From positions 242,501-306,500 of IMG/VR virus record IMGVR_UViG_3300020380_000001: a DNA stretch of 64,000 nucleotides. One strand, given 5' to 3'. Below the pieces are notes generated by a model that saw nothing but the letters and a program-made list of their open reading frames with translations, searched no databases and had not been told where the DNA came from. Shown here piece after piece: positions 1-54,147 of the stretch. Positions within the stretch are counted from its first letter, which is position 1. Each line of letters starts with the position of its first letter. Position numbers and translations under genes: made by a program.

Positions 1-432
1 ATCACCGCCAGCCAAGCCGCACCCGATTTGCGGGTATGCGACTCGTATTGGTGGTAGACCGTTTGCTTCGCGTTCAGCGGCAGAGTCGCGTAAATCATTA
101 CCCAACTCTCTAAAGAAATCAACCAAAGCAGTGTAGTCGACAGGGCAGTCTTCAGGCGAAGTTCGCGGGGCGTACTGGGTGTAAGCATTAAGGACAACAA
201 ACTCGTGATCGTTTATCGTTAACACCGCAGACGAAAAGCTGCCTAGCTTAGAACGATCACCTTTTTTAGTCTGTTCTTTATCAGCTTGCGGCACTGCTTG
301 CCAGCCAGGTCGTCGTGCTATTTGCCCTGCTATACCGGAGCCCATCGCATGCAGACAATTACAGCCGTGAACCATAATGTCGAACTGCGCGTTCTCCATC
401 ATCTCGAGTAAATCACCTTTAACTTTTTTCAT
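1..432 (-). CDS. Macro domain (Appr-1''-p / ADP-ribose processing) protein, T4 Tk.4-like; runs off the window edge
   Basis: Not in the ORF track. Manual translation from ATG at 432: MKKVKGDLLEMMENAQFDIMVHGCNCLHAMGSGIAGQIARR...VVLNAYTQY...VAYPQIGCGLAGGD. Shows the GD, HGCN..MG.GIA and P.IG.GLAGG macro-domain motifs. Confidence 0.9.
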   Translation of the reverse strand, partial: MKKVKGDLLEMMENAQFDIMVHGCNCLHAMGSGIAGQIARRPGWQAVPQADKEQTKKGDRSKLGSFSSAVLTINDHEFVVLNAYTQYAPRTSPEDCPVDYTALVDFFRELGNDLRDSAAEREANGLPPIRVAYPQIGCGLAGGD

Positions 433-22490: not shown

Positions 22491-22526
22491 GTAACATTTT
22501 AAAATGTTACTAGATCTTGTAACATT
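22491..22526. repeat. three alternating GTAACATT units, including a perfect 20-bp palindrome
   Basis: GTAACATTTTAAAATGTTAC (22491-22510) and AATGTTAC-8 nt-GTAACATT (22503-22526). Confidence 0.75.
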
Positions 22527-23970
22527 ACTTCTTAGTACTGTCGTACCACACTGTTTTACCAAACGGTGCTTCAATGCGATGCTCTGGATCATCACAGATC
22601 AACCATATAGTCTCACAGTACTTGGGATCGCCCCAGCTGCCGTACGGATAACCGTCAGTAGCAACAAGTAGGATTTTAGGAACTTCACGCTCACGCTTCA
22701 AATAATCGAAGATTGATGTAAAGCTAGTACCACCACAGCCCACAAACTCAACCTTTTCTACATCAGCGATGTTGTTACGAGTAAAGTGGAAAATATTACG
22801 CGAGTCAACTTCATCATCAAACGCAAACACTTTCAAGCTAATTTGACTAAACTGGGAAAGCATGCCTTTAACTTCTGATAGGAACTCGTTCAGGTTGCGT
22901 TGACTAATTGAGCCTGAGTTGTCAATCGCAATTACTACTTCAACCTCATCGTCATACTCTTGTCCGGGTAGTACAAATGTACCGCGCCCAAATTGACGTC
23001 TATTAGGGCGTGCGTATGTGTGCAAGTTGCGGATATAACCTTTTGTACGCGCCATAAAGTATTGTTTCCAATTCACTTGAGGCTTTCTCAAGTCACGCAC
23101 AAAACGACGCACGTTGCCAGGAATATTGCCTGCACCCTTGCCCTGTGTCATATCAGCGTTGTCGTGCGCCTGCTGTACAGCGCCCACGATCTCGCGTTGC
23201 AATTCTTGAATCTCAGCGCGAGTCAGCTTGTTGCCCTTGCCGTCACCTTCTTGATCACCGTCTTTGGAGTCGCCTGACTGGCTCTCTGCGTGATCGTCAA
23301 GTGTTGAACCGTATACTTCTCTGAGCAACTGTTCTAATTCTTCGCGTGAAATTTGCTGTGACCCTTCACCGCTGCCGTCACCGTCACCGTCTTCGTCACC
23401 GGTGTCGCCTTGCCCACCACCAGCGCCGGGTACTTTCAGTCCGCCACCTTGGCCTGATCCGGATTCATCAACATCAATGCCGTGCTCGTTCTTCAGTTCA
23501 TCTTTTAACAAGTCATAAACTTGCTCTGAAGTCATACCGCTATACTTAGGGTCATACAAGCCGGTTGTTACGCCGTTAATAGTAGGCAGCGCTGTACCAA
23601 AAATTGTTGAGTTGAGCTCAATCATCTCACCATTAATAACATAGTCAGTTGCCCAACCCCATAACGTAACATTACGATTACCCACACGAGCAATACCACC
23701 GTGCTCGTATACGTTATGCATGATTTCATGGCCAATAACAAACGTTACGCCTTTTTGGTCGTCAATTGACTCGGTCCACTTTTCGTTAAACTTAACCCAG
23801 CGGCCGTTTGTTGCCATTGTATGAATGCGCGGATGATCAGCAGGCACTTGAGAAAATGCTAAGCGGCTAACTAAAACACCGAAGAACGGCTCGCTCAACA
23901 TGATGTTTACTACGGCCTGCTTGACTCGAAACTTCGCGTCATGCTTGTCTTTACTAAACGGGTTTCTCAT
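22525..23970 (-). CDS. DUF2201-type metallopeptidase plus vWA domain protein
   Basis: TMATNG, HEIMH (HExxH), ATDYVIN, acidic G/D linker, MIDAS DNSGS, GGT.F, TDG. Confidence 0.9.
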   Translation of the reverse strand: MRNPFSKDKHDAKFRVKQAVVNIMLSEPFFGVLVSRLAFSQVPADHPRIHTMATNGRWVKFNEKWTESIDDQKGVTFVIGHEIMHNVYEHGGIARVGNRNVTLWGWATDYVINGEMIELNSTIFGTALPTINGVTTGLYDPKYSGMTSEQVYDLLKDELKNEHGIDVDESGSGQGGGLKVPGAGGGQGDTGDEDGDGDGSGEGSQQISREELEQLLREVYGSTLDDHAESQSGDSKDGDQEGDGKGNKLTRAEIQELQREIVGAVQQAHDNADMTQGKGAGNIPGNVRRFVRDLRKPQVNWKQYFMARTKGYIRNLHTYARPNRRQFGRGTFVLPGQEYDDEVEVVIAIDNSGSISQRNLNEFLSEVKGMLSQFSQISLKVFAFDDEVDSRNIFHFTRNNIADVEKVEFVGCGGTSFTSIFDYLKREREVPKILLVATDGYPYGSWGDPKYCETIWLICDDPEHRIEAPFGKTVWYDSTKK

Positions 23971-24642: not shown

Positions 24643-25854
24643 TTATGCCTCCGCTCCTTTGTTTGCTTTTTTCTCTTCGAGTAGGAATCTGAACTTAGCT
24701 TCACGACGCATCAAGCTGTACACTGCGCTCTTTTTCCAAGCGTTAGGGTTACGACGTGCTAGTCCGCCGATTTTAAGCGCTGTACGGATGCTAACTTCAT
24801 CCAAGTCATGCATATAAACATTCAGGAAGTCAACGATTTCTTGCTTCATGTCGTCACTCAGTTCCAAACGGTTTTTCTCAAACAGTCCAGTACTCACTAA
24901 GCTTTTGATTCTGCGAATTTTATCTTCGACTGTACCGATTTCCAAATCATAGTACAAGCTTCTTGACTTAAGTGCATCCAAGTGAGGTTTAATACGCACA
25001 CTACGAACACGATCAAAGTCAAGGTTAGAGATAAATATCACACTACCGCAGAAGTCAAACTGTCGTGGAACCCCTTCTTCTTCAAGGATACGCGACTCAG
25101 CCATCCAGCTAATTGTGCGTTTATGGTCAGTATCAAGTGCCGCTTTTAAAATGTTTAAGCTAACGTCGTCATAAAACAAAGTATCACAGTCATCAAACAC
25201 CAATACTTGACCTTTGTCTCTGTACTGAAATAGCTCTTGATAAAGCGCTATCGGGGTTATTGTACCTTTAATAACGCGATATGTACGTTCTTCAGAACCA
25301 AACGGGTTAGTAGCTGTGTGGTCGCCTGACAGGAACATGCCGTTCGTGCATAAAAAGCGGTAGTAGTCTTTGGCTACTGCGTTCACTAAGTGACTTTTAC
25401 CGATACCAGCAGGGCCACTAATAATCATGCTTGACACGTCACCTTCACACACCGACCAAGCGATATCACGTAGTATATCAAAGCTTTGCTCAATGCGCTC
25501 AAGTGCTTCTTCTTCAGTCTCAGAATTACGGTACGCTAGTTCGTAGCTTGTGTCGTCACAAGCTTCACCAACCGCCTCAGCGATTGCTGTTTTCTGCGCT
25601 TGGGCTTTTTTAGCGTCTTTCATTGCTTTGCTTTGCAAAGTAATTGTTTCACCGTCGTATTCTTCTAAAAACTCAAAGTTTTCAACGTCGTCGGAAAAAA
25701 CACGCTTGCCTTTCTTCTGCATTGGAACAGGAACAGTAACGTAATATGAATTTTTAACAGGAAGGAAAGTTGCAGAATTAGAGGTAGTTTCTAAAACACC
25801 GTTTAGTTCAGAATCGCCAGTAGTAGTCCAGCCATCAACAATACGTACAAACAT
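24643..25854 (-). CDS. phage AAA+ ATPase
   Basis: Walker A ISGPAGIGKS, Walker B VLVFDDCD, LNILKAALD, IFISN, ALKSRS arginine finger. Confidence 0.88.
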   Translation of the reverse strand: MFVRIVDGWTTTGDSELNGVLETTSNSATFLPVKNSYYVTVPVPMQKKGKRVFSDDVENFEFLEEYDGETITLQSKAMKDAKKAQAQKTAIAEAVGEACDDTSYELAYRNSETEEEALERIEQSFDILRDIAWSVCEGDVSSMIISGPAGIGKSHLVNAVAKDYYRFLCTNGMFLSGDHTATNPFGSEERTYRVIKGTITPIALYQELFQYRDKGQVLVFDDCDTLFYDDVSLNILKAALDTDHKRTISWMAESRILEEEGVPRQFDFCGSVIFISNLDFDRVRSVRIKPHLDALKSRSLYYDLEIGTVEDKIRRIKSLVSTGLFEKNRLELSDDMKQEIVDFLNVYMHDLDEVSIRTALKIGGLARRNPNAWKKSAVYSLMRREAKFRFLLEEKKANKGAEA

Positions 25855-25911
25855 AATTTCACCTTTAAATTCTGCGCTACTGCCTAATTGCTGTAACGCG
25901 TCAATGTCATA

Positions 25912-25940
25912 ATAATAGATTATTAGGTGGATGGTTGCAA
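25912..25940 (-). promoter_or_regulatory. sigma70-like promoter
   Basis: TTGCAA-17 nt-TATTAT with AT-rich UP region. Confidence 0.6.
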
Positions 25941-25977
25941 GAAAAGATTAAAAGAAAATTGATTTTTTTCCAAACAT

Positions 25978-26005
25978 AAAAAAAGGCTGCAATTGATGCA
26001 GCCTT
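25978..26005 (-). terminator. intrinsic terminator after the MoxR-like ATPase
   Basis: Minus strand AAGGCTGCA-TCAAT-TGCAGCCTT followed by TTTTT. Confidence 0.8.
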
Positions 26006-26040
26006 CAAAGGGTAGGGCGTTGCCGCCCTTGTCAGAAATC

Positions 26041-27177
26041 TTAAGCCAAACCAAGCATCGGTCCGTACTCAACAATGAATTTCGCAAAGTTCTTGTTTTG
26101 AGGCGGTACAATTTGTTCGCGGTTTGCGGCAGTCATGTACTTCGCTCTCCAGCGTCTGATCAGCGAGCTAACAGTAAAGAACGTCATCTCTGAAGTACAG
26201 AACTTTTCACAGAATTCGTACAAGTTGTCGAACATTACGCTCGTGTTAGCGTTGCCGATGCCCGTTTCCTTTTTGTCCTTGTCGTACTGCTCAATCATTT
26301 CAAGCACAGCACCGTAAGTCAAGCTGTAAAACGCTGATTGCTTTTCAATTTTCAAGTTTTTGTCGTAGTTGCCTTCAAGGATTTGTCGCGGAGTTGGTAG
26401 CGAGCTAATGTACTCCATGTGAACAACAAACTCGTTCGCAATACCGTCACCAACAGCACCGGCAACCATTAAGTCAAGTGTTTCGTTGTCAGCTTCACCT
26501 TTTTGTAGGATGTCGCTAACCACTTCCCATGAACGCGGTGTTGCAAAGCTGTACGACTCGTTTTTAAGCGCTTCGTCAAATGTGTTTAAGTGGCTCTTGC
26601 GGTGCATTAAGTAAGCAATAACCTCACGCGCCAAGCCGTTTTCAATTGCCCATTCCTGCCATTCTTCGAAGTTAACTTCAAGATTTACAAAGATAAAGCG
26701 GTTACGTAGCGGCATAGCCATGTCGAAAGTCGCGCCGCGATCTTCTGTTCTGTTACCCGCAGCAACAATATCAACGCCCGGTGGAAGTTCGTAGTCACCT
26801 AGCTTGCGATCAAGTACTAGCTGATAAGCTGCCGACTGTACAAGAGGCGGTGCAGTGTTAAGCTCGTCAAGGAAAATAATAGCGTTAGCTAGTTTTTCGT
26901 TAGTAGGAAGCGTTGACGGCTCTGCCCATTCCATCTTTTTAGTCTCTGGGTCAAAGTAAGGTACACCACGAATATCGGTGCTGTCAAACTGTGCTAGACG
27001 CATGTCAATTACTGGACGGCCTGAGCGGCTTGCAATTTGTGCAATAATTTGGGATTTACCTACACCAGGCTGTCCCATAATCATAATAGAACGCTTGATA
27101 CGGAATGCTGTTTCAACGCACTTAACAAGTGATTTCGGCGTTGCTTTGCGTGTGGTGTCTATACTATTCTCTGACAT
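26041..27177 (-). CDS. MoxR-like (AAA_5) ATPase
   Basis: GQPGVGKS, IDMRL.QFD.TDIRGVP, IIFLDELN.A...VQ.AAYQL.LDR, AAGNR..D, PL.NRF, ATPRSWE. Confidence 0.92.
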   Translation of the reverse strand: MSENSIDTTRKATPKSLVKCVETAFRIKRSIMIMGQPGVGKSQIIAQIASRSGRPVIDMRLAQFDSTDIRGVPYFDPETKKMEWAEPSTLPTNEKLANAIIFLDELNTAPPLVQSAAYQLVLDRKLGDYELPPGVDIVAAGNRTEDRGATFDMAMPLRNRFIFVNLEVNFEEWQEWAIENGLAREVIAYLMHRKSHLNTFDEALKNESYSFATPRSWEVVSDILQKGEADNETLDLMVAGAVGDGIANEFVVHMEYISSLPTPRQILEGNYDKNLKIEKQSAFYSLTYGAVLEMIEQYDKDKKETGIGNANTSVMFDNLYEFCEKFCTSEMTFFTVSSLIRRWRAKYMTAANREQIVPPQNKNFAKFIVEYGPMLGLA

Positions 27178-27271: not shown

Positions 27272-30200
27272 TTATTTTTTATCGACACTTCCGTCTATAT
27301 TGATTATGAACTGATCACCGTTAAACGGGTTGTCTATTTGTTTAAGTACGCCCAAGTCGCCAGGTATTGTTCTATCTGTTCTCAAGTCCCATGCTTCTGT
27401 ATCGAAGTTATAAACGTAAACCTGATCAGTTTGTACTACATATACAGTACCTTGATCAAAAGCACCTTCTAAATATATGTTAGACCAAGTACTGCTTCGC
27501 TGGCTGCGGTTCGCATATCCATAACTATGCGGCTCATTTCCTACCCATGCTAATTCTGGATATTGTTCAGTATCCACTTCTATTAGTGAGTTAGGATTAT
27601 CCTTAGGGTCACCGTTAGGATTGCCGCGCGTTGTTACCCACATACGTATAATAGGACCATCGCGTTCTATACGACAACGCCTTGCACTTGTGCGCCATTC
27701 GTTCACACCGTTATGTGTGGCAGTATAAGGCGCAGTAATAGTGAGTACCGCTTCTACCAAGTCATTTGGTCTAGCCGCATTCGAGCGAACATACACAAAA
27801 GCCCATCCTATATCATTAGTCATGCCATCATAGGTGTAGCCGTTTTGTGTATTATACGCAAGTAAAGAATGGTTAATTGAGCCTTCACGCTTAAAGGCAG
27901 CAATCATATCAATCTCATCGTCGTCGTTATCGTCAGAAGAAAGAGTAGCCTCAAAAGTCAAACTACTTGTTTTATCCGGGCTAACAAAGCCAGTCAAGTT
28001 AGGATGGTTCTCTGTGCCGATTATTTGCTCAAGTGCTGCGTCATAATAGTATGAATCAGCACCGTTATCCGCAGCGGTCCCGCCCGGATAGTAATAGCCG
28101 TTAGAGATACGGTCCCAATTGTTGAACACCTCAGCCGGCGTAGGCGCGTTATAGTCACGCATATATGTCTGAGCCTCAGACAGTGTTTCGAACATAAGCG
28201 CTTGTTGGATAGGTAGTACCGCTGCTGAAATTGTAACTATGCCTTCATGGTTAGTAGCCAACAACCTTTCTTCTAAGTTCGTTATAGCCACACGGAACTG
28301 TTCTTCTGTTTCAGTAACATTATCACGCAACACACGAACGGATATATTCTTAACGCTGTCACCTTCATTAAACGTTACTGACGCATTAGTCACATTGAAG
28401 TCCGGCTCAAGCACGGTGTTGTAGTTCTCAATCTCTGCTGTATTTGACAACCCAGCATGGCTGCCGGTTAACTGCTCTAGTCCGTCTATAATAGGATTGC
28501 CACCGTATGTTGCTCGATAGTTGTCAAAGTTAGTAGCAACAAGAGAGCGATGTACGCTACCCTTAAAGTTAGCATAAAACCTACGAGCAAGGTTATTGGC
28601 GTTGGCAACGTATCCGGACGATCCTGTGTCATTACCGTTAGACGTCACTATATACAGGCCTACTTTATCACGGCGCACTGCGCTTTCGATAGCATCACCT
28701 AGTAAACTAGATATATTTCCGGGGTAATCCTGCGATAAGCTACTAACGAAAATAATTGCGCCATAGTTAGATAGCGTTGTTGGATCCACTTCACTGATAT
28801 ATTTGGTGCTTATTATATACCCGGCTTCGTTTAACAAATTGCGCATGGCTTTGCCGTACGAGGTGCTCGTAGTGGTATCTTTCACACTCAGGGAGCTTTC
28901 GTTATCACCAAGTATAAGAACGTTAGATTTGCCAGTGCCGTATGTTAGGAAGTCCATTATATTCCTAAACATTTTATATTCAACCGTATTGTTTGACGGA
29001 CGGTCATCCCATGTACTGTTTCTGTACTTTTGAACAGACGGGTCAAACACAACTTTAATATCACTGAAGTCGCAGTACATTAAGCCCGTTCTTCCTGACG
29101 TATCGCTGAACGCTTCCTGTGGGCGCGACACTGTACTGTTAGCTCTAGCCGTTTCATCCACAGTAGAGTAATTAACAGTTATATTACGACCCTCGACAGG
29201 CTCGCTCGCAATTATCTGCAAGTCAACATCAATATACGCACTGTCTTCCGGCTCCGATACCGTAGCTGACGTGATACGGAACTTAGGATAGTTAACAAGG
29301 TTTCGTATTGTAAAGGTTGCATTGCCGTCAACCACTTCACCGGTGTCATTGTCTGTTACTTCTAAATTAATAGTTACTTCAGTATCATCCGGCACATCAA
29401 AAGTAGTAAGAAGCGCATTTAATAAATGCGGGGCTGAGATGCTGTAAAAACTATTGCCAGACACTTGGCTCCACTGGTAGCTAAAATTGCCGCTGCCGCC
29501 CGTAATAACTGGCACTAAGCCAAGTCCCGCGTCTTGTTGATTCTCGTCCACAGACATTGAGTTCATACGCAGAGCTAGGCGCTCACGTGTGTCAATTACG
29601 TTAATAGTTGATTCTGCCAGGTACTCTTCCCATGAATATAAATCAATGACGCGCACTTGCAACACAAGGGATTCGTTCTCGTAAAATACAGGGTTGGTAC
29701 CTGCGTTCAATACGGCTACAAGCTGGTCAGGATCTGTTATGGTAAGGTCCATGCCGGGTTCACTTGTGCTCAGTATGCGCCAAGCATAGTTAAACGCATT
29801 AGAGCCGCCTGTTACTGTAACCAAGTCTGCCAAGTTTAGCGACGAGCGGTGATCCATAGTAGCGCCATCCAACGTAACAGTGGCTTCTGAAACTTCGTAA
29901 CCGTCTTGCTCGTCTAAGTGAGTAACAACTGTATACTCTGGCTTAGAGTCAGTCATGTCAATATTGGCCACACTATACGAGTGGTCAACGTTTATTCTAA
30001 ACTCGCCGCCTATTGGCTGTGTTTCAGGGTCACTATGACATAATACCCTAAACGAAACAAAGTTAGCCTGAACTGCCGTCTGTAGCGCGTTCAGTTGTAT
30101 GCCTGGATCGCCCGGACCAAATTTGGCTTGGACTTCAATACGATTGGAAGTGCCCGCGTCATAATATCCGCTCGGCAGGCTATACTCATAAACAGTTTGG

Positions 30201-31057
30201 TACTCGTTAGTCAAGTCATAAAAGCCCAGAATATTTCCCGTACCCACACTGTTTTCAGAAGTCATGCCATACACTGTGAACTTAAGCGCACCGACATTGT
30301 CAACTAGTGTCTGCCACTTTGCATTTTCTGCGGGGTCGCCTGGCGGTGGTCCCTCAAGCGGATCAGTGTCATAATAACTAGGCGCGTCGTATGAATCAGG
30401 TTCAGTATAAGTAGGCGTTACAATAATACTTGAGCCGGCATTAAAGAAGTACCTAGCCAAGTTGTATTCATCCCAAACAGCTTCGAACTCAAATTCCAAG
30501 CTTTCTGACCATAGCTTTGTACGAGTACTTGAAGCGCCGAAGCCGTCAACCGTGGTTAGCAAATTACCGGGTTCCACAGTAAAGCGCTTCGCAGCAATGT
30601 TTTCCATAAGCGTAGTGAGCGGGGCGGCAGTGCGTTGATCATGGGCGTAAATCAGCTCGCCTTGTTGAATATCAGCAGGGAACGAATCTGTGATTGTTTG
30701 CCTTTCAGTTTCACCTAGATTAATGTGGTTAACTAGCTTGCGAATTATGCCCGCAAGGGTGCCCCACTCTTGCTGAAACTTGTACTTGTAATCAGCAGTA
30801 GAGCCTGTCGTTGTACCCGACACAAGGTCTGAAATATCACTTACTTTGCCCGAGCCGTCACTTGCATTTTCAGGGGCAATGACATCCGAACGACCGTAAC
30901 CAAAGCCGCCATCGTTTATGCCAGTTTCACCTAAGTGACGATCATTATATAGTTCATTAACAATAAACGCAAAGCCGTTATAGTCTTCAGCATCTATCGA
31001 TCCGCCTTCTACATAAGACGCCATTAATTCTAAAATGTTATTTTTTGTTGCTGCCAT
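27272..31057 (-). CDS. virion fibre/appendage protein (1261 aa): shared N-domain, 2 Ig/PKD-like repeats, split Calx-beta, lectin-like tip
   Basis: N-domain paralogous to neighbours (DYN..GFGYG..RYFFNAG); GGS..F.Y.W repeats; Calx-beta motifs VNYSTVDETA and TF.EGDSVK.I.V....D...E.EE.F. Confidence 0.8.
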   Translation of the reverse strand: MAATKNNILELMASYVEGGSIDAEDYNGFAFIVNELYNDRHLGETGINDGGFGYGRSDVIAPENASDGSGKVSDISDLVSGTTTGSTADYKYKFQQEWGTLAGIIRKLVNHINLGETERQTITDSFPADIQQGELIYAHDQRTAAPLTTLMENIAAKRFTVEPGNLLTTVDGFGASSTRTKLWSESLEFEFEAVWDEYNLARYFFNAGSSIIVTPTYTEPDSYDAPSYYDTDPLEGPPPGDPAENAKWQTLVDNVGALKFTVYGMTSENSVGTGNILGFYDLTNEYQTVYEYSLPSGYYDAGTSNRIEVQAKFGPGDPGIQLNALQTAVQANFVSFRVLCHSDPETQPIGGEFRINVDHSYSVANIDMTDSKPEYTVVTHLDEQDGYEVSEATVTLDGATMDHRSSLNLADLVTVTGGSNAFNYAWRILSTSEPGMDLTITDPDQLVAVLNAGTNPVFYENESLVLQVRVIDLYSWEEYLAESTINVIDTRERLALRMNSMSVDENQQDAGLGLVPVITGGSGNFSYQWSQVSGNSFYSISAPHLLNALLTTFDVPDDTEVTINLEVTDNDTGEVVDGNATFTIRNLVNYPKFRITSATVSEPEDSAYIDVDLQIIASEPVEGRNITVNYSTVDETARANSTVSRPQEAFSDTSGRTGLMYCDFSDIKVVFDPSVQKYRNSTWDDRPSNNTVEYKMFRNIMDFLTYGTGKSNVLILGDNESSLSVKDTTTSTSYGKAMRNLLNEAGYIISTKYISEVDPTTLSNYGAIIFVSSLSQDYPGNISSLLGDAIESAVRRDKVGLYIVTSNGNDTGSSGYVANANNLARRFYANFKGSVHRSLVATNFDNYRATYGGNPIIDGLEQLTGSHAGLSNTAEIENYNTVLEPDFNVTNASVTFNEGDSVKNISVRVLRDNVTETEEQFRVAITNLEERLLATNHEGIVTISAAVLPIQQALMFETLSEAQTYMRDYNAPTPAEVFNNWDRISNGYYYPGGTAADNGADSYYYDAALEQIIGTENHPNLTGFVSPDKTSSLTFEATLSSDDNDDDEIDMIAAFKREGSINHSLLAYNTQNGYTYDGMTNDIGWAFVYVRSNAARPNDLVEAVLTITAPYTATHNGVNEWRTSARRCRIERDGPIIRMWVTTRGNPNGDPKDNPNSLIEVDTEQYPELAWVGNEPHSYGYANRSQRSSTWSNIYLEGAFDQGTVYVVQTDQVYVYNFDTEAWDLRTDRTIPGDLGVLKQIDNPFNGDQFIINIDGSVDKK

Positions 31058-34000
31058 TATGACCTTTCACTTATTGTTCTTGTAGACACTGCTCGTATTT
31101 CATAATACTCAGTACCGCTTACTACCACAGCCAGGGTGTCTGCAACTGAATCCCATTCAATAAATATACCTGCGCTCGGCGCAGTGTGCGGGTTACCCTT
31201 AGACGACATTGTGTAGCCGTCGGGTGCTACCATGTAATATTTATTACCAGTGGCGTTCGCATTAGTGAGTACGTTAGTAAACAAGTCGCGGTAATTACTT
31301 GGCAAATAAAAGTAGCCGAATGTTAAAAACTCTGCATTCTCTAGTGTTGTGCCACCGTGCGAGTTTGTTCCTCTACATTGTGCCCATACACATATTTCTA
31401 TGTCATTTGTTGCGCTTGCTACTGATGCAGGCAAGTCGTACTCAACATTTACCTTATTCCAAGTATCAACCGATGTTGCTTGTAACAGTAAGGAAGAGTA
31501 GTCAACCGGCGCATAAGACCTTTCCATAACGCTAACAATATTAGGCAGTGGGGTGCCAGTATTATCCAACAGCTCACATAACCTAACCGTGCCATCAAAC
31601 GTAAGTACCAAACGATACGTAGGTGAGCACTCAATAACAGCGACATAATTGTCAGTGCTACGCACGTCATAAGTAGACATGCCGCTTGAACTGAATATAC
31701 TGTCGTCTAAAACAAAGTGATACTGAGTAGATAAAATATCAGTATTGCCCAGCGCACTTGTGTCAACTGTTACCATATATTCTTTGCCTGAGTCCCAATT
31801 AAATGAACTCACATTAGGCGCGACAACCTCTGTCCAAATTTGGTTGGTTGCTGTACCTGCAGGGGCTGTATTACCTGCATTATTGTAATAAACAGGCCTT
31901 TCGTTTAGTTCAAGTATTTGTGAGCCAGTACTAATGTCAGGAATAGTTTTAAATTTAGACCTGTTTGTCTTCCAATCAGTGTCAGTATCTCTATCAGTCG
32001 GACCCCTAAATATAGCCGATATACCAACTGACTGGCTACGTGACGATCCGCCTATTACTATCTCACTAGCAGGTGTTGCCGACGAATTAAACGGCTGTAA
32101 TACTTCATAAGCAGGGACTATTCTGTTCGAAACTAAACTTACCAAATCAGTATTTGATGCGCCTCTATCAGTTACACTTAATAAGGCATACTCGTGGATG
32201 CCGCCTCTAAACGTATTGTGGTTCACTGCGAAACCATCTTGCTCTTGATAAGGCTGTGCACGTTCAGTTTTTGGCTCAATCCAAATAGTAGCAGGATAGT
32301 CGCCATTGTCGATTGTGCTTAGGCCAGATCCACTGTAATAATTTACCCAACTAAAGTTAGCGTTTTCAATCGTTACCGTAGCACTGAAATTAGCTGTACG
32401 ATTGGCAGTGGTGTCAGAAACAGTCACATCAACAGTAATTGTCTGTGATACGCCAAGATCAGGAATCGTTAACGTTGGGTTAGCTGCGGCTGGATCATCA
32501 ATTGTAATGCCCTGGTTACTCGGATTAAACGACCAAGCGTAGGTGTAATCACCGGAGCCACCAGCTAAGTTATCAATTGACATCACGGTAGTGTCATCAT
32601 CATTGACAGTTTTGTCGTTTAGTGTACCGGTAATCTGTGGCCAATTGTAATTGACATCGAATATAATCTCATTACTTGCCTGCACAGTGCCTTCGTCGTC
32701 AGTTACTACTAATGTTAGTGTTTTAGTTTGCGGTGTGCTGTCACCATCGATAGCGCCAGTAAACGTTAAATCAGTCCCGGTAACATTTACGTCAGCCGGG
32801 GTAGTCCATGCGTACGAGTAAGGTGCGTAACCGCCGCTAATTGATATTAACGAACTCAAATTATACGTTGAATCATGTAACATTGTGAACGACGGTGATG
32901 CGTTACTGCCGTTACCTAACGTAACAGATAAAGGTGTTGTTTGATCACTAACGGTAATCTCGGATACAACTTGCTCTACTTCGCCGGTATTATCATCTGT
33001 TACGGTTACGCGTACAGGAAGCACAAAAGTATAGTCAACATAGTCAACATCAATTACCGGTGTGCTGCCAGAATCAGTCACGTTGTACACGTCAATAAAA
33101 CGGGCAGTGTTGCCTGCTGAATCAAGTACTGGCGTATTTTTATCATATGCCCAGCTTACACTGTAAGATCCGGAACCGCCAGTCACACCTAAATAATCAC
33201 CAAGTGTTATTGCTGATTTTTCAGTCATGCTGTTAGCAGTAAACACAACTTCAAGAGGCGGTACATTGTTGTTTATTGTTATTGTGCTTGACGCAGTAAC
33301 CACTTCACCAGATTCGCCTAAGTCAGTAACAGTGATTTGATAATCAACTGCCTGAGGCTCAGTGCCGCCGATATAATCACTGGTATAAACTGACCCAACA
33401 AGGTTACCGTATCCCGGCGTTAGAATTTCATACACCACGTCAAGCGGTCCGTTACCGCCTGAATATGATATAACAGTACTCAAGTCAACGCTCTGTGTCT
33501 CGTCAACTGAAACAGTACCCGCGCTCGCAGTAACAGGTGGCGTCAAATCATATACGTTCACAGTAGCAGTGTCAGTCACAGTTGTACCGTCACCCGTGTC
33601 AGTTACTTCAACAATAAGAGTAAACGCCTTATCGCCCACGGCTTCTGTAACTTGGATTTGCGGCGCTTCTATATCAGTGGCAGTTATGAAAGAGTACAGG
33701 GAGTCATTAACCGGGAAAACAGACCACTCATATGTGAAGGGTCCTATACCGCCGGTGCGGTTTAGTTTGCCGGCCAAGTCAAGTACCGCATTTTCATCAA
33801 CATCGTATGAGTCTTGATTTAAGCTCGCACTGAATGGCGCAGTCGTGTCTTTTACAAGTATGACGCCGTATGCTGTTACTTGTTCATTTAACACTGTATC
33901 AGTAACAGTAAGGGTCATTTGAACTGCGCGGTCACTGTTTACGTTGGCTGCTGTAATTTGCGCGTTAAGACTAGCACTGTCATCTATTGTCAGGAAACTA

Positions 34001-35370
34001 GCAGAGTAAGACCAGCTATACGCATATGAACCAGATCCGCCAGTTAAGGTAACAAGACTCCCCAAGTTATAACTTGTTTCTTCATCCAACGTTACATCAT
34101 CAACGGATAGTTCCATTTCCGGCGTAGTATCAGTCACCGATAGCGTAACAGTAAAATCATAAGTTTGGCGCGTTACAATATCATACACGTTGAGATTAAA
34201 GTCAACATCATATGCAAAATAATAACTGCCATTGTAAGTGGGCGTAAACAGAGCGCGTAACTTGTCGTCGTCTGTTAACGTATGACCGGCAGGGAGTTCA
34301 CTAGGCGGTGCTGGGATTGACCAAAGGAACTCAAAGTCGCCTGATCCACCAAGCACAGAAACCACAGTTGACATATCAACGTCAACATCATCTTCAGTTA
34401 TTGATAGTACTTGTTGTGACACTTGCACTGGTTGATATACTACCGCGTCTACTGAGTCTAGTCCAGTAACAATAACAGACGATGGCAGTAATGGCCTAAA
34501 TTCATCACTAGCATATACCAAGTCAATATTCACATACAACTCAGTGCCAACCGGGTTACCCGAAATGTCCAGGTACCTTACACGGATATAGATGTCTTTG
34601 TCAACTCTACGTAACTGAACACTAACAGAGTTACCATCCACATCTTCTAAACGATAGATTGTACTGAATGTACTGCTAAGTGAATAAAACCCAATGTTAT
34701 CGGCAGGCTGTTCACTATTAGACAATGTTGTGTTATTAAAGTCAACTACTATTTCAGGGAAATTAGGCAATAATGATTCCCAAGCTGCGTTGCTTGATGG
34801 GTTACCAGTACTGCCAGGCGCAAAGTCTGCGTTAATCTTTATCTTGCCACCAGTGTTAAAGAAGTAACGCATATCCTTATAACTATTAAACACTAATCGT
34901 GACTCGTGCTGGATCGCACTTTCCCAAAGTTCTGTTCTCGAAGATGCGCCATAAACGCCTCCAGAGCTGCTAGAAACTCTATTAACGGCAACGTTAAATC
35001 TATTGTCGCTAATTTGATCTAGGGCGTCTGTGATCTTCTTCGGGTCACTTACGAATGCACTAATAATGTCGTTAACTGCTGGATTACTGTCATCAGTCAA
35101 TACGTCATCAACTGAAATATCATCTTCCAACACTGTGCCTTGGTGTGCTGCGATACGGTTAATATTGTTGATTAACTCAACCCATTCACTAGCGGTTATA
35201 AGTTGCTCATCAAACTTAGTTGTAAAAGACTCAACTTTACCGTAACCGAAACCCGCAACGTTTACGCCGCTAGCAGTTCTACTCGCGACATCACCTATTA
35301 GCTTTTCTACAGTTTCCTGAAAGCCATTGAAGTGTTCGTTTTCAATTAAATTGTTTATATTATAACTCAT
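31057..35370 (-). CDS. virion fibre/appendage protein (1437 aa) with about 7 tandem Ig/PKD(SprB)-like repeats
   Basis: Shared N-domain (HFN..GFGYG..I.ASEW..HQGT..SRT..W..MRYFFNTGG); seven GG.G/AP.Y.Y.W repeats about 100 aa apart. Confidence 0.82.
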   Translation of the reverse strand: MSYNINNLIENEHFNGFQETVEKLIGDVASRTASGVNVAGFGYGKVESFTTKFDEQLITASEWVELINNINRIAAHQGTVLEDDISVDDVLTDDSNPAVNDIISAFVSDPKKITDALDQISDNRFNVAVNRVSSSSGGVYGASSRTELWESAIQHESRLVFNSYKDMRYFFNTGGKIKINADFAPGSTGNPSSNAAWESLLPNFPEIVVDFNNTTLSNSEQPADNIGFYSLSSTFSTIYRLEDVDGNSVSVQLRRVDKDIYIRVRYLDISGNPVGTELYVNIDLVYASDEFRPLLPSSVIVTGLDSVDAVVYQPVQVSQQVLSITEDDVDVDMSTVVSVLGGSGDFEFLWSIPAPPSELPAGHTLTDDDKLRALFTPTYNGSYYFAYDVDFNLNVYDIVTRQTYDFTVTLSVTDTTPEMELSVDDVTLDEETSYNLGSLVTLTGGSGSYAYSWSYSASFLTIDDSASLNAQITAANVNSDRAVQMTLTVTDTVLNEQVTAYGVILVKDTTAPFSASLNQDSYDVDENAVLDLAGKLNRTGGIGPFTYEWSVFPVNDSLYSFITATDIEAPQIQVTEAVGDKAFTLIVEVTDTGDGTTVTDTATVNVYDLTPPVTASAGTVSVDETQSVDLSTVISYSGGNGPLDVVYEILTPGYGNLVGSVYTSDYIGGTEPQAVDYQITVTDLGESGEVVTASSTITINNNVPPLEVVFTANSMTEKSAITLGDYLGVTGGSGSYSVSWAYDKNTPVLDSAGNTARFIDVYNVTDSGSTPVIDVDYVDYTFVLPVRVTVTDDNTGEVEQVVSEITVSDQTTPLSVTLGNGSNASPSFTMLHDSTYNLSSLISISGGYAPYSYAWTTPADVNVTGTDLTFTGAIDGDSTPQTKTLTLVVTDDEGTVQASNEIIFDVNYNWPQITGTLNDKTVNDDDTTVMSIDNLAGGSGDYTYAWSFNPSNQGITIDDPAAANPTLTIPDLGVSQTITVDVTVSDTTANRTANFSATVTIENANFSWVNYYSGSGLSTIDNGDYPATIWIEPKTERAQPYQEQDGFAVNHNTFRGGIHEYALLSVTDRGASNTDLVSLVSNRIVPAYEVLQPFNSSATPASEIVIGGSSRSQSVGISAIFRGPTDRDTDTDWKTNRSKFKTIPDISTGSQILELNERPVYYNNAGNTAPAGTATNQIWTEVVAPNVSSFNWDSGKEYMVTVDTSALGNTDILSTQYHFVLDDSIFSSSGMSTYDVRSTDNYVAVIECSPTYRLVLTFDGTVRLCELLDNTGTPLPNIVSVMERSYAPVDYSSLLLQATSVDTWNKVNVEYDLPASVASATNDIEICVWAQCRGTNSHGGTTLENAEFLTFGYFYLPSNYRDLFTNVLTNANATGNKYYMVAPDGYTMSSKGNPHTAPSAGIFIEWDSVADTLAVVVSGTEYYEIRAVSTRTISERS

Positions 35371-36526: not shown

Positions 36527-37330
36527 TTATTTACATGAAGGTTTCTTTACGGGGAACAGAGCAGGGCAATAAGCAACATCATATCCAGTTGTCACAGTGC
36601 CTTGGACCGTTTTGTTGTTGAGAATCTCAATATCAGTGTAGACAAATACATTGTCCCACTCGACTCTAGCATCAATTTTGATACGCACGTATTTGCCATC
36701 ATAACGATAGACGGTTGTGCGCTTAGTGCCAATATCCATTATACCGATATTATGGCCAGTACCCGCATACGATGTGGCAGTGTCACCGAAACGTAAACGA
36801 ACAGTACCCACTTCCCTATCAAACTTAGCTAGTTCAGTAGAGTAAAGCGACGATGCTAGACGACTACCATCAATAGTCACAGCAAGGAACCCGCCCAATT
36901 TAAAAAAGTTCTTCATATGTTTGAAATCATCAAACACGTAAGTCGCTTGTGATCCAAATGTGGATTTGGGATTCTTGTGCTTTATAAGCTTTAGTTCACC
37001 AGGTCCAGTAGCTGCGATATAAGACGCGCTAACTTTTAGGCCTTTACCGGCTTCTTGTTGCTGTTTAAAGTGTTGTGAGATTGTTTCTATGTTTCCGAGC
37101 ATGGTGCTTTTTTCAGGCAAGCCAAGTAGAGTTAACAGCTTTGCAACTTCTCGCTCAAAATGAGCGCATGCATCCGCGTCAGCCTCTTTTAAAGGCGACA
37201 CTAGAGGTATGGGCTGTGCGCCGATACCCCTAAACTTGTCTGCTTTAGTGATTGGTTTTTCAGAATCAACCACTAATTTGTTGAACAAGATGGCACATGT
37301 ATTATATTCAGTACCATGCACGTTATACAT
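36527..37330 (-). CDS. divergent basic paralog of the fibre N-domain family (267 aa)
   Basis: MYNVHG.EYN, RGIG, FDDFKHMKNFFKLGG, VG.VR, G.G.NIG..DI. Confidence 0.7.
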   Translation of the reverse strand: MYNVHGTEYNTCAILFNKLVVDSEKPITKADKFRGIGAQPIPLVSPLKEADADACAHFEREVAKLLTLLGLPEKSTMLGNIETISQHFKQQQEAGKGLKVSASYIAATGPGELKLIKHKNPKSTFGSQATYVFDDFKHMKNFFKLGGFLAVTIDGSRLASSLYSTELAKFDREVGTVRLRFGDTATSYAGTGHNIGIMDIGTKRTTVYRYDGKYVRIKIDARVEWDNVFVYTDIEILNNKTVQGTVTTGYDVAYCPALFPVKKPSCK

Positions 37331-38124
37331 TATAGCACGAACCTCGTAACAGCTTCAACAAGTTTTTCACCTTGTTCACTTGAACGACCAAGTGCGCGGC
37401 CAATTACTTCAGGAGAACTACGGTGGCCAACTTCTGCACAACCAGGGAATTTACGTGAAGCAACCAAGTAGTCACCTACAAGAACTTCGCCAACTACACG
37501 AACAGGAACTCGTCCAGCAAGTGCTACCGGCAACCATTCATCTGCGCCTGTCTCTTCAGTTGCATTCATTAAGAAAGCAGGTGCTGTTGACACTACACCA
37601 AACGGAATGTCGCCACTTTGTGTAAACTCAGTGATTTCTTTTTCGCCACCAAGCATAACAATTGTGCCAGGCTCATACACCTTATCTGCATGGTATTTTT
37701 CTGCAATATCCGCGTAACGTGCACGGGCTGCTGTACCAGAGAACTCTTGGGCGTATACAGTACAGAATTCTAATGTACTTGACCCGATATTGTGCTCACC
37801 ACCTGAACAGTTCTGTGAAGGTAAAATGTTACCGTCAAAGATATAGTTCTGACCTTCTTTAAACGGGAAACTGATCCAGTCACTGCCTTTACGTAGCTTG
37901 AATTCAGATTCAGCAATATCCCACCAAGTTTGCCCTTCTGTTGGGTTAAGAGGTTCGGATCCGCTTGCTGAGTTTTCTAGGATCTGTAGCATGGCTTTCA
38001 TAACATGCTCGCCATATCCGGTTGTGTTACGGCCCACTAACGGGATTGAAAATTGTTCTGTATCAACTGTGCTGTCGTTGATAGTGACAGCGCGTCCATC
38101 ACTTAAATTAATTAGATATGCCAT
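37330..38124 (-). CDS. short tail-fibre/baseplate protein with C-terminal intramolecular chaperone (peptidase G2-like) domain
   Basis: N-terminal MAY.IN..DG, L.GRN..GYGE, LEN.A...P.NP..GQ.W.D; C-terminal ADIAEKY..D..YEPGT, GVVST.PA..MN, PVALAGRVPV.V.G. Confidence 0.8.
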   Translation of the reverse strand: MAYLINLSDGRAVTINDSTVDTEQFSIPLVGRNTTGYGEHVMKAMLQILENSASGSEPLNPTEGQTWWDIAESEFKLRKGSDWISFPFKEGQNYIFDGNILPSQNCSGGEHNIGSSTLEFCTVYAQEFSGTAARARYADIAEKYHADKVYEPGTIVMLGGEKEITEFTQSGDIPFGVVSTAPAFLMNATEETGADEWLPVALAGRVPVRVVGEVLVGDYLVASRKFPGCAEVGHRSSPEVIGRALGRSSEQGEKLVEAVTRFVL

Positions 38125-38887: not shown

Positions 38888-41800
38888 TTAAAGATATTTA
38901 TAAGTGATAGGATTAGCTGCGCCTGAACTCTTAACAAACGACTCTACACCGCTGTCAAATTCAAAGCTATCGCCTGTATAGAACACGTCAGGATCAACAT
39001 ATTGTGTATCAGACACAAACTGTATTCTGGACCCGGGTGCATGGTTTGCTATACTTGTGCTTAGCTGGCCTCGCTTCAATCCGTAGAATGTTGTGTGAGT
39101 GCCATCGTAAGCAATATTTGAGTAAACAACCATCTCGCCGTTTATCCAAAAACGCCCTGTATTACCTTGATTCGTGTAATCTCCTTCAACTTTTACGCTG
39201 TATTTATTACTTGGTAATTCACTGGAAGACACAGTCGCAGACGCGTTGCCCATTACAAATACTTGGTGATCACTTGTCTCATCAAGCAAATAACGGTACG
39301 CGTAGTTTGCGTCACTAAACGATGATTCACTCACAATTACTAACCAGCTATTGATAGGAATTGTAGTGTTATCAAACGTTATACTCGCATCTGTGTCCCA
39401 CGGCGTGCTATCCCATCCATGCACGTACTCGCCGTCAACAAACTCGTCCCAAGGCTCCGAGCGCACGTTGTTGAAGAAGTCAGTTAACTCTTCTACTATC
39501 CACTCAGTTGTAACGCCAGGCGACACGTTGTAACGAGGTACTTTTCTAGCAACATAAACCCGTGATGTAGAGCTATCAACATCAGCAAGAGTTAGGTTGT
39601 CACTTGTCACTTTTACATACTCAATTGTATGAGAAGGGTTAGTTTCAACCGTAACAACTAGCGCGTCGTGTACCTCAATTGGCGCTATGCCAGACATAAG
39701 ATCTTCACGCGTCATAGGGTTAGCAAATGAACGAGATTCACTTGGACGAACGTCATAAATTTCAACAATGTCGCCTTCATGTAAAGGCACAATTACCCGC
39801 AGAACTTTTTCAGTCGCATCATAATTGAACATATTAATTTCACGTCCATTTACGAACACAAACGGCCCCATTACGTCTACAACTTGGGTGGTTACGTCAA
39901 ATTCAACCACAAACGTTTGGTTCATCTCCGGCTTATATTCAATGTACATATATCCGGCATCGCTTGCGCTCATTAAGCCTGGATCGTTCTCGTCAAAAGT
40001 ACCAAACTCGCCAGAATCAATTGCGTAAACGCGACCTGAGTTAACATCATTAACACGATCAAAAGACGCCTCGTCATACGTCAAGCTAGTCACACTACCG
40101 TCGTTAGGCGGTATATCACTTACGCTTTCTGACCAAACTCGGTTAATGTTTATCGTAGTCGTAGTAACAATGTCTTCAAGCCCAGTTATTTCAACCAAGC
40201 TATCATCATCACGGTTAACCGTATAAGCAGACGAGAAGTTTCTTATCTTAGTTCTATACGGTTTCACATCTTCAATATACGAGCCCAGTAACTCAATGTT
40301 ATTTGGTGTTGTAATAGCCGGTGTGTCGAACGTGTTGCCTGTTTGGCGCACGCTTACATACGAAGTCTTAAACAACCAATCAACATGATCCTGTTCGCTC
40401 ATTACATAAACGAATGCAGTGAATACGGCACTGTTCATGTATTTTTCAGTGTCGCCAACAAATATGTACTCACGCAATAGATCCATAAGGAGTCTAAGTT
40501 CAAGTCGTAGTTGGTGGCTATATTTGCCAGTCCATGCTCTTGGCAAAATTTCCACTGTTTCGTTTTGTACAGCAACAATCTCAAAACTACCAGTTGAGTT
40601 AACTTCGTAGATAGTGTAATTTGCATTGACTACTGGTTGAACTCTTACCTGGTCCCCAGTTACGAGCCTAGATTTCAGGGCACTTAGTTCACTCGGCGAC
40701 TTTACTAAACGAGTAGGGTTAACATTCTCAGCGCTATACCCGTCAGCATACCATACACCCCATTGCCATAAAGTACCCTCTTGCTCTGCTAAGAATAAGT
40801 TCCATTCAGGATAATCAGACCTAATACGTAGGTTCTTAATGTTTTCATTAATATCCTGGAATATAACCTTACGGGCAGCAAATACGTCTTTAAACCAGCT
40901 TTGGCGAGGCGTATTAGAGTTACCGTATTTTTCGTAATCGCCAAGGGAAGGATCAGGAACCATCAAGTATGAATCCGTGCTCTTGGCACCAGTTACTGCT
41001 TCTATTTGAGTTGGTAAATCAGGCAACGCACTGGACGTATATGATCCAACAAACTGCGACGGTACGTCTGGACTTGTTTCATAAACAAGGCGCACATACG
41101 AGTCAACCGGATGCTCTACTACGTCAGTGTCTTGATAACCCCTGTCTAACCCAATTAGTTTTATTTTCCCGTATTTAGATTCGTTGCCATCGGCGTCAAC
41201 AATTACGCGGGTATTGTAGTAAATGCGCTCTCCGTTTAGCTCTATAACACCACGAGATTCAGGGAATCGGGTGTCGTATCTGTCAAGTAAAAGACTAGTG
41301 ACGTTTCCGGTTGTTAGCTTGGATTCAGTGTAAGCGAAACCGTCTTCACGTAAATTGTAAAGACCTTGTTTAACCTCGTCCCATCCAGTCGGCTTAGTTA
41401 TACCAGTAAACGAGTCAATGAACTTCTCCCAGTGCGCTTCTGGCAACTTAGTATCCGACCCGTCTTCGTTTATAATCACCCACTCGGTGTGATCTTGGTT
41501 ATGTGTTTCTTTATACTTGTAGTTTATTTGGAACGCGGTGTTTCTATTGCGTGCTACACTAGACACGTTAGCGAAAACAAAACTATTCCCGTCAACTGCG
41601 TAACTAGATGTTTGGTATGAAATCGCAAATGTTTCGTTTGGCTCAAGCACACTATCAAACTCAAGACCTCCCTTAACTACACGCCAGTTATGTCCATCAC
41701 CATAGAACTTACCGTCGCGCAATCTAAACACGCGCACGTCACTGATCCAGTCTGCACCCAAATCAATAAAGTTGCCAGTCTCATAATCAGTTGTAACCTC

Positions 41801-54118: not shown

Positions 54119-54147
54119 AAAAAAGGCGCTTTTAAGCGCCTTTTTTT
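54119..54147. terminator. bidirectional intrinsic terminator
   Basis: AAAAAAGGCGCTT-TT-AAGCGCCTTTTTT between convergent genes. Confidence 0.88.

What the first reader, a model, noticed from the sequence alone, without database searches (positions are those of the whole stretch)
28228..29283. Calx-beta domain split by a ~244-aa inserted alpha/beta domain
Seen: the first half (...ITVNYSTVDETARA, ending about 29141) and second half (EPDFNVTNASVTFNEGDSVKNISVRVLRDNVTETEEQFRVAIT, starting about 28408) are the two halves of the Calx-beta consensus, normally contiguous at TA.ag.DY. The insert (NVLILGD...LLNEAGY...LSNYGAIIFVSS...GLYIVT) resembles a class I glutamine-amidotransferase-like fold. Inference: a loop-inserted binding or enzymatic module displayed on a Ca2+-binding stalk, possibly acting on host surface polymers.
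Basis: partly seen in the sequence, partly recalled or inferred. Interest (0 to 1): 0.6.

Follow-up and report, generated by a model that had tools for sequence, protein, structure and literature searches.

The report
Calx-beta domain with nested alpha/beta domain
A tail-fibre-like protein of an uncultivated 306-kb jumbo phage carries a Calx-beta sandwich with a complete 244-residue alpha/beta domain inserted in one loop; several jumbo-phage lineages share this nested module, which is probably an adhesion unit, but its ligand is unknown.

Summary

The insert has no Pfam family. A full HMMER scan of 1.84 billion representatives found 21 hits, one of them a spurious Calx-beta-repeat protein. Eleven carry the same split Calx-beta, in about four architectures. 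Eight carry the domain free, as in phiKZ gp201, 201phi2-1 gp298 and PhiPA3 gp235, which are virion proteins.

The gene lies in a baseplate and tail-fibre block. I read the module as a laterally displayed adhesion unit. Catalysis is unlikely here: no nucleophile is conserved, and this copy has lost the family's Asp-His motif (D806S, H807N).

It is a new variant of known kinds and moderately interesting.

The parts
27272..31057 (-). Gene for the 1261-aa tail-fibre-like virion protein (P0001) that holds the module
   Evidence: ORF list and translation. It lies downstream of baseplate hub and wedge and tail-fibre-like genes. Its C-terminal part matches PHROG 'tail fiber protein' and 'virion structural protein' families.
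29141..29284 (-). Calx-beta N-terminal half (residues 592-639; strands up to the conserved T-A of the motif)
   Evidence: Pfam PF03160 profile 12-53, E 0.013 when scanned alone. Part of the single sandwich that superposes on CBD1.
28409..29140 (-). Inserted alpha/beta domain (residues 640-883, 244 aa): an N-terminal beta-meander plus a flavodoxin-like, class I GATase-like core
28229..28408 (-). Calx-beta C-terminal half (residues 884-943), starting at the D-F that corresponds to the motif's D-Y
   Evidence: Pfam PF03160 profile 55-115, E 1.1e-9. Aligns to NCX1 CBD1 and CBD2 sequence.
28637..28642 (-). Codons for S806-N807, where the rest of the family has Asp-His (T-D-H motif after the fifth parallel strand)
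   Evidence: Column counts: D in 20 of 20 other members, H in 18 of 20. This protein and its 95%-identical relative have S-N.
29288..29860 (-). Two Ig-like (PKD/SprB-like) repeats, residues about 400-590, preceding the module
   Evidence: Weak Pfam matches to K319L-like_PKD and SprB, below threshold. The G-G-S-x-x-F/Y-x-Y-x-W motif occurs at residues 417-426 and 520-529 and recurs many times in the neighbouring P0002.
29858..31057 (-). N-terminal domain (residues 1 to about 400) shared with the upstream paralogue; presumed virion attachment part
   Evidence: BLASTP of P0001:1-420 against P0002:1-420: 24% identity, E 4e-22. Its function is inferred.
27275..28195 (-). C-terminal domain (residues 955-1261), presumed distal receptor-binding domain
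   Evidence: PHROG 21285, 33406 and 36886 (tail fibre / virion structural), E 1e-18 to 1e-10. tblastn to PaBG 'putative tail fiber protein' and PhiPA3 gp235. Language-model leads to concanavalin-like families, as leads only.
31057..35370 (-). Upstream paralogue P0002 (1437 aa). Its stop overlaps the start of P0001 by one base. Context, not part of the module.
   Evidence: PHROG 2973 Hoc-like and SprB repeats.

Best explanation
Structure (shown). Residues 592-943 of a tail-fibre-like protein of a 306.5-kb jumbo myovirus form a nested two-domain module. A complete Calx-beta sandwich has an autonomous 244-residue alpha/beta domain inserted in the loop that normally reads T-A-x-x-x-D-Y. From memory of the NCX1 CBD1 structure, this is the C-D loop at the Ca2+-binding tip.

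Origin (shown). The insert belongs to a small, unnamed, jumbo-phage-restricted family. Its free-standing form is the N-terminal domain of the phiKZ gp201 / 201phi2-1 gp298 / PhiPA3 gp235 virion proteins. Its fold is flavodoxin-like and class I GATase-like, closest to the N-terminal region of IMPa.

Mechanism (inferred). The Ig-like repeats and the Calx-beta sandwich act as shaft and pedestal. The inserted domain projects sideways from the fibre. It serves as an auxiliary, non-catalytic adhesion or recognition domain for a host-envelope ligand, most likely a glycan or glycoconjugate, next to the concanavalin-like C-terminal tip domain.

The nested module travels as one cassette between different phage fibre proteins. 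In this particular copy the ancestral Asp-His site is lost, so its ligand site is altered or vestigial.
For: Nested structure: (see observation check).

Autonomy of the insert:
- It folds alone (pLDDT 91.4, pTM 0.91).
- It occurs free near the N-terminus of eight representative proteins and in 78 jumbo-phage records.
- 201phi2-1 gp298 is annotated 'identified using mass spectrometry; virion structural protein', and PhiPA3 gp235 likewise as virion structural.

Fold:
- ESM Atlas shape matches to ImpA, ABC_transp_aux, DUF4350 and IFT52_GIFT, TM 0.5-0.59.
- Family profile against 2gk3, E 0.004.
- BFVD best hits are jumbo-phage virion proteins, TM up to 0.86.

Cassette behaviour:
- Eleven further representatives and Dickeya phage JA11 gp092 have the insert at the same loop in different architectures.
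- Split and free forms are separated by a branch with 100/100 support.

Tail-fibre context: baseplate wedge and hub upstream; a syntenic locus for P0007; collagen-like fibre genes around P0012 and tail-fibre genes around JA11 gp092.

Binding rather than catalysis:
- The IMPa N-terminal domain is reported to hold an exosite that binds an O-glycopeptide (PMC10550946; bioRxiv 10.1101/2021.09.09.459412).
- Relatives combine the domain with ILEI, PA14, CHB_HEX_C-like and Kelch-like parts.
- No conserved nucleophile; D806S and H807N in this copy.
Against: - No binding experiment and no ligand.
- I could not read model coordinates, so I could not check whether the conserved polar residues (D672, N680, N699, D718, S/T773, D/H806-807, N821) form one pocket.
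- I did not verify that IMPa's glycopeptide exosite lies within the residues (109-369) that superpose on the insert.
- GIFT-like and OST48-like neighbours act in protein-protein assembly, which fits a purely structural role equally well.
- The family-wide Asp-His motif could be catalytic in relatives.
- Virion location of this protein is inferred from neighbours and PHROG names, not shown.
Confidence: 0.6

Rival explanations
1. The insert is an assembly or architecture domain. It makes protein-protein contacts within the baseplate or fibre network, as GIFT domains do in IFT52 and OST48, and has no host ligand.
Against: The best neighbour is IMPa's substrate-recognition region, not GIFT. Many invariant polar residues (Asp, Asn, His) are more typical of a small-ligand site. 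The domain is shuffled among proteins with lectin-like partners.
Confidence: 0.25
2. The insert is an enzyme (an S51-like peptidase, amidase or esterase) that processes a host surface polymer during adsorption.
Against: No conserved Cys. Ser772 is replaced by Ala, Cys or Gly in 5 of 22 members, and position 773 is Ser/Thr. In this protein Asp806 and His807 are Ser and Asn. There is no Pfam, NCBIfam or PDB sequence match to any enzyme family above threshold.
Confidence: 0.12
3. There is no real insertion: two separate domains, or a chance resemblance of the flanks to Calx-beta, or an assembly or frameshift artefact.
For: The N-half alone is only marginally significant against Pfam (E 0.013).
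Confidence: 0.02

Closest known systems
Calx-beta domain (Pfam PF03160; NCX1 CBD1/CBD2, CALX CBD1, integrin beta4)
   Different: The domain is interrupted by a 244-residue folded domain between T-A and D-F. The C-terminal acidic triplet seen in NCX1 and in relatives such as P0012 and P0015 is absent here. The only large elaborations of Calx-beta loops that I recall lie in the F-G loop of the NCX CBDs, not at this site (memory, not tested).
N-terminal region of IMPa (P. aeruginosa M88/M60-like O-glycopeptidase; PDB 5kdv, 7jtv; Pfam PF18650 region)
   Different: 10% identity and no Pfam PF18650 hit for any of the 22 family members. There is no peptidase domain in this protein. Whether the exosite residues correspond was not checked.
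phiKZ gp201 / 201phi2-1 gp298 / PhiPA3 gp235 virion structural proteins (PHROG 11065)
   Same: True sequence relatives of the insert: PHROG E 7e-6, phmmer E down to 1e-17 for free forms. PhiPA3 gp235 also shares the C-terminal domain of P0001.
   Different: There the alpha/beta domain is free, following a small N-terminal beta domain, and is not nested in a Calx-beta. They keep the T-D-H motif that this copy has lost. Their function is also unknown.
Dickeya phage JA11/JA13/JA29/JA33 'putative ILEI domain-containing protein' (gp092, 1177 aa)
   Same: The same nested Calx-beta/insert module at residues 613-963: 26% identity, E 9e-18 by tblastn. It sits among tail-fibre genes.
   Different: The rest of the protein differs: an extra N-terminal paralogous alpha/beta domain and an ILEI domain at 399-493 that lies outside the module. 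It keeps the T-D-H motif and the acidic D-D-D end of the Calx-beta.
ThuA / GIFT (IFT52, GldG ABC_transp_aux, DUF4350) / STM3548 branch of the class I GATase-like superfamily, and S51 peptidases
   Different: All Pfam matches are below family thresholds. There is no Cys-His-Glu or Ser-His-Glu triad. The extra N-terminal beta-meander is shared only with IMPa and partly with S51 peptidases.

Membership tests
Calx-beta (PF03160) | HMM score above Pfam's gathering threshold | tested here: met
   36.9 bits for the whole protein and 46.1 bits for residues 585-950, against a 27-bit cut-off.
Calx-beta (PF03160) | Seven-stranded beta-sandwich superposable on CBD1 | tested here: met
Calx-beta (PF03160) | Contiguous domain of about 100-120 residues | tested here: not met
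   244 residues lie between profile positions 53 and 55. This is a nested variant.
Calx-beta (PF03160) | Acidic Ca2+-ligand set as in NCX1 CBD1 | tested here: inconclusive
   The alignment to NCX1 keeps D886, D912, E916 and E919. One position is Arg (R911), and the C-terminal D-D-D is replaced by S-A-A. Ligand roles in CBD1 are from memory. No binding test was possible.
Class I glutamine amidotransferase-like fold | Flavodoxin-like parallel sheet that superposes on GATase1, ThuA or S51 members | tested here: met
Class I glutamine amidotransferases / S51 peptidases (as enzymes) | Conserved Cys-His-Glu or Ser-His-Glu catalytic triad | tested here: not met
   No conserved Cys. Ser772 varies (A, C or G in 5 of 22). 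The His807 position is Asn in this protein. No residue-level structural alignment was available.
IMPa N-terminal domain (PF18650) | Pfam HMM match | tested here: not met
phiKZ gp201-like virion protein domain (PHROG 11065) | Profile or sequence match to the family | tested here: met
   phrog_11065 E 7e-6 on the insert alone. phmmer links to free-form members, which match PhiPA3 gp235, 201phi2-1 gp298 and others at E down to 1e-78.
phiKZ gp201-like virion protein domain (PHROG 11065) | Family-invariant polar residues (Asp and His of the T-D-H motif) | tested here: not met
   S806 and N807 in this protein, against D in 20 of 20 and H in 18 of 20 others. It is a divergent member.
ThuA (PF06283) | Pfam HMM match above threshold | tested here: not met
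   Only 3 of 22 members match, best E 0.0054. The window protein does not match.
Phage tail fibre / receptor-binding protein | Presence in the virion at the baseplate periphery, and host binding | not testable with these tools
   Supported only by gene neighbourhood, PHROG names and mass-spectrometry annotation of a distant relative.

The most novel reading that the evidence does not exclude
The nested cassette is a Ca2+-gated adhesion switch. Both linkers of the inserted domain leave the Calx-beta sandwich at its Ca2+-binding tip (D886 aligns with the loop Asp of NCX1 CBD1). Ca2+ occupancy would then set the orientation or rigidity of the displayed domain, coupling the divalent-cation dependence of adsorption to receptor engagement. 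On this reading a modular 'sensor plus binder' unit was invented once and then exchanged among jumbo-phage fibres.
Probability: 0.08. Interest if true: 0.7.

Novelty: new variant of a known kind. Interest (0 to 1): 0.42.

Why it matters
**A clean natural example of domain nesting.** A whole, autonomously folding domain sits in a loop of a small beta-sandwich that is usually a passive spacer. The nested unit has been conserved and shuffled as a cassette among the fibre proteins of several jumbo-phage lineages.

**A structural handle on an unnamed family.** The insert family (the phiKZ gp201-type N-terminal domain) has no Pfam entry and few representatives (21 hits, one spurious, in 1.84 billion). 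Placing it as IMPa-N-terminal-like and class I GATase-like gives testable hypotheses for virion proteins of phiKZ-like phages whose function is unknown.

**A practical warning.** Domain callers see only the C-terminal half of such Calx-beta domains, so split domains of this kind are under-annotated.

It does not change any major concept.

Tried and rejected
**Sequence searches that found little**
- Word-index searches with the module and with the whole protein found only P0004, P0011 and ordinary Calx-beta proteins.
- No orthologue without the insert was found. The sensitivity of those searches is limited, so this is not evidence of absence.
- IMG/VR scans with the family alignment, a subset alignment and P0007 gave an error or no confirmed locus.
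- A single-sequence PDB search of the insert found nothing meaningful.
- NCBIfam found nothing except a sub-threshold NCX hit on the Calx-beta half.

**Leads considered and rejected**
- The 'ILEI domain' name of the Dickeya relative was checked. The ILEI domain lies at residues 399-493 of that protein, outside the module, and is not the insert.
- The language-model Atlas leads DUF4092 and TCAF_N scored below 0.9 and were used only as leads. The ImpA, GIFT and ThuA leads agreed with the fold searches; DUF4092 was not followed.

**Literature**
- The IMPa PNAS paper is not held.
- One paper matched only because 'impa' also matches 'impact'.
- Nothing useful was found on phiKZ gp201, and no paper on an insertion in a Calx-beta domain of a phage fibre.

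**Limits of the tools**
- Model coordinates are not readable in the Python box. I therefore did not map conserved residues onto a pocket or measure the interface between the domains.

- No reads tools, no alternative genetic code and no complex prediction; none was needed.

Full report
**Where it lies**

The window is the last 64 kb of a 306,500-bp IMG/VR virus record with direct terminal repeats, rated complete. PHROG scans identify a myovirus structural block on the minus strand:
- a virion protein (56109-58142),
- a baseplate hub with lysozyme (54146-56107),
- a baseplate wedge (49406-53338),
- a 3504-aa ORF (38888-49402),
- tail-fibre-like proteins (for example 37330-38124).

After these come two large paralogous genes and then an ATPase:
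- P0002 (31057-35370, 1437 aa),
- P0001 (27272-31057, 1261 aa),
- the ATPase (26041-27177).

The wedge gene is about 66-68% identical in DNA to PA5oct-like Pseudomonas jumbo phages. The finding lies inside P0001. Residue n corresponds to window base 31057-3(n-1).

**Checking the observation**

- the first half ends at residue 639 (base 29141),
- the second half starts at residue 884 (base 28408),
- the insert is 244 residues.

Pfam behaves as follows:
- On the whole protein it finds Calx-beta only at 886-942, matching profile positions 55-114.
- The N-terminal piece scanned alone matches profile 12-53 (E 0.013).
- The C-terminal piece scanned alone matches profile 55-115 (E 1.1e-9).
- Residues 585-950 together score 46.1 bits against a 27-bit cut-off, as two stretches.

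The two matches therefore abut in the profile. In a canonical multi-repeat Calx-beta protein (P0005), phmmer places matches to module positions about 5-55 and about 297-359 directly adjacent, repeat after repeat. The alignment to NCX1 shows that the break falls between the T-A-R of one strand and the D-F/Y that opens the next.

**Is it an insertion or two domains?**

I folded residues 585-950 with a 22-sequence alignment of the module (A1). The model has pLDDT 88.2 and pTM 0.79.

The intervening residues (model 58..298) match a different set of structures.

**The inserted domain**

Folded alone, with alignment A2, it is very confident: pLDDT 91.4, pTM 0.91. It has a three-stranded beta-meander followed by alternating strands and helices.

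Its structural neighbours are:

|---|---|---|
| IMPa, residues 109-369 | 11.5 | 174 residues aligned, rmsd 3.5 A; covers the whole insert |
| S51 peptidases (7ffp, 6nqc, 6a4t) | 8.3-8.9 | |
| ThuA-like 1t0b | 7.5 | |
| IFT52 GIFT domain | 7.4 | |
| OST subunit 6s7o_G | 7.3 | |
| STM3548 2gk3 | 7.2 | |
| several glutamine amidotransferases | about 6-7 | |

Other evidence agrees:
- Foldseek ranks IMPa first (E 1.9e-4).
- The ESM Atlas shape search gives the ImpA, ABC_transp_aux (GldG-type), DUF4350, IFT52_GIFT and GATase clusters at TM 0.43-0.59.
- At sequence level, the family profile hits STM3548 at E 0.004.
- Three of 22 members touch ThuA at E about 0.005.
- No Pfam, NCBIfam or single-sequence PDB match exists.

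The domain belongs to the non-amidotransferase (ThuA/GIFT/IMPa-N) side of that fold class.

**Relatives**

Family scans and word searches left the insert open, so I ran the full HMMER scan of 1.84 billion representatives. It gave only 21 proteins at E <= 1e-3. One of them (P0020) is a spurious Calx-beta-repeat hit.

Eleven hits (P0007-P0016 apart from the free forms, plus P0019 and P0022), together with the 95%-identical P0004 from the word search and Dickeya phage JA11 gp092, have the same split Calx-beta with the insert at the same loop. Pfam again sees only the C-terminal half in them. Their remaining architecture falls into about four types:
- orthologues of P0001 (P0007, P0011; the P0007 locus is syntenic),
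- a shorter type (P0008, P0009, P0013, P0016),
- the Dickeya type, with an extra paralogous alpha/beta domain and an ILEI domain (P0012, P0014, P0015, JA11 gp092; collagen-like fibre genes nearby),
- the P0019/P0022 type.

Eight hits carry the domain free near the N-terminus. tblastn with one of them (P0017) finds 78 phage records, nearly all phiKZ-like jumbo phages. The genes include PhiPA3 gp235, 201phi2-1 gp298 ('identified using mass spectrometry', virion structural protein) and, according to those annotations, phiKZ gp201. BFVD agrees: the best structural matches are jumbo-phage virion proteins (TM up to 0.86), a PaBG PA14-domain protein and the Dickeya protein.

In a maximum-likelihood tree of the insert, split and free forms are separated by a single branch with 100/100 support. 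This is compatible with one nesting event. The tree is unrooted, so direction is not shown. The genome has one copy of the domain.

**What distinguishes this copy**

Across the other 20 members the most conserved positions are D672, N680, N699, L714, G717, D718, G746, Y765, G800, T805, D806, H807 and N821.

This protein and its 95% relative differ at several of them:
- S806 where Asp is found in 20 of 20 others,
- N807 where His is found in 18 of 20,
- V675 for Phe, R679 for Tyr, L723 for Tyr, N872 for Ser.

The Calx-beta also lacks the acidic D-D-D end that the Dickeya-type relatives keep. D886, D912, E916 and E919 align with acidic residues of NCX1 CBD1. The ligand roles of those CBD1 residues are from memory.

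**How it most likely works**

Shown: a nested Calx-beta/alpha-beta module inside a large protein encoded in a baseplate and tail-fibre block.

Inferred: the N-terminal 400 residues, shared with P0002 (24% identity, E 4e-22), attach the protein to the virion. The Ig-like repeats and the Calx-beta act as shaft and pedestal. The C-terminal domain (PHROG tail-fibre families; concanavalin-like leads) is the distal binding tip. The inserted domain projects from the side as an auxiliary adhesion or recognition domain.

The binding reading rests on three points:
- The nearest neighbour is IMPa. Its N-terminal domain is reported to hold an exosite that binds an O-glycopeptide, and to act like a carbohydrate-binding module (PMC10550946; bioRxiv 10.1101/2021.09.09.459412; PMC9513282).
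- Relatives pair the domain with lectin-like partners: ILEI, PA14, a chitobiase-C-like beta domain and Kelch-like repeats.
- The family's conserved residues are Asp, Asn and His rather than a nucleophile.

I did not verify that IMPa's exosite lies in the superposed residues, and I could not inspect coordinates.

A purely architectural role is the main rival. An enzymatic role is possible for relatives that keep Asp-His but unlikely for this copy.

**Comparison with what is known, and novelty**

Both folds are known. The insert's family is known only as unnamed 'virion structural protein' entries. My paper searches returned no description of a domain nested in this loop of a Calx-beta, nor of this cassette. 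That is weak evidence, because the library is partial.

I rate it a new variant of known kinds. It is a real and tidy architectural finding that also gives a first fold assignment to the phiKZ gp201-type domain, but it has no demonstrated function.

Only genetic code 11 was used.

Noticed in passing
window 31057-35370 (-), P0002: A 1437-aa paralogue immediately upstream, with its stop overlapping P0001's start by one base. It shares the N-terminal ~330 residues with P0001 (24% identity, E 4e-22). It then carries at least seven Ig-like repeats with a G-G-S-G-x-Y/F-x-Y-x-W motif (SprB / Hoc-like hits). The same gene pair plus an AAA ATPase is syntenic in locus L008.
   Followed up: partly
window 38888-49402 (-): A 3504-aa ORF directly downstream of the baseplate wedge gene has no Pfam family at E <= 1e-3. 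It is a giant uncharacterised structural protein.
   Followed up: partly
window 28637-28642 (-), residues 806-807: This phage lineage replaced the insert family's invariant Asp and near-invariant His with Ser-Asn, and changed four other conserved positions. The 95%-identical relative from another sample has the same changes. The ancestral site appears to be lost or remodelled here.
   Followed up: yes
L001 4168-7701 (Dickeya phage JA11 gp092) and P0014, P0015, P0019, P0022: These relatives hold additional paralogous copies of the alpha/beta domain outside any Calx-beta, plus an ILEI domain. P0015 has two tandem copies, one preceded by what looks like a truncated Calx-beta first strand.
   Followed up: partly
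P0008, P0009, P0013, P0016 (C-terminal parts): The short-type relatives continue after the module with a region containing a D-T-S-G-S-T motif. It looks like a von Willebrand A metal-site motif. This is read by eye and was not tested.
   Followed up: no
L006 4965-7445 (PhiPA3 gp235) and Salicola phage SCTP-2 gene 99: These proteins combine the free alpha/beta domain with a C-terminal domain homologous to P0001 residues ~950-1200. P0001 therefore shares two separate modules with the phiKZ gp201-type proteins.
   Followed up: partly
window 22525-23970 (-) and 24643-27177 (-): A 481-aa HNH endonuclease (PHROG 1314) and two AAA-type ATPase-like genes (PHROG 1297 and 1250) lie immediately downstream of the fibre genes.
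   Followed up: no
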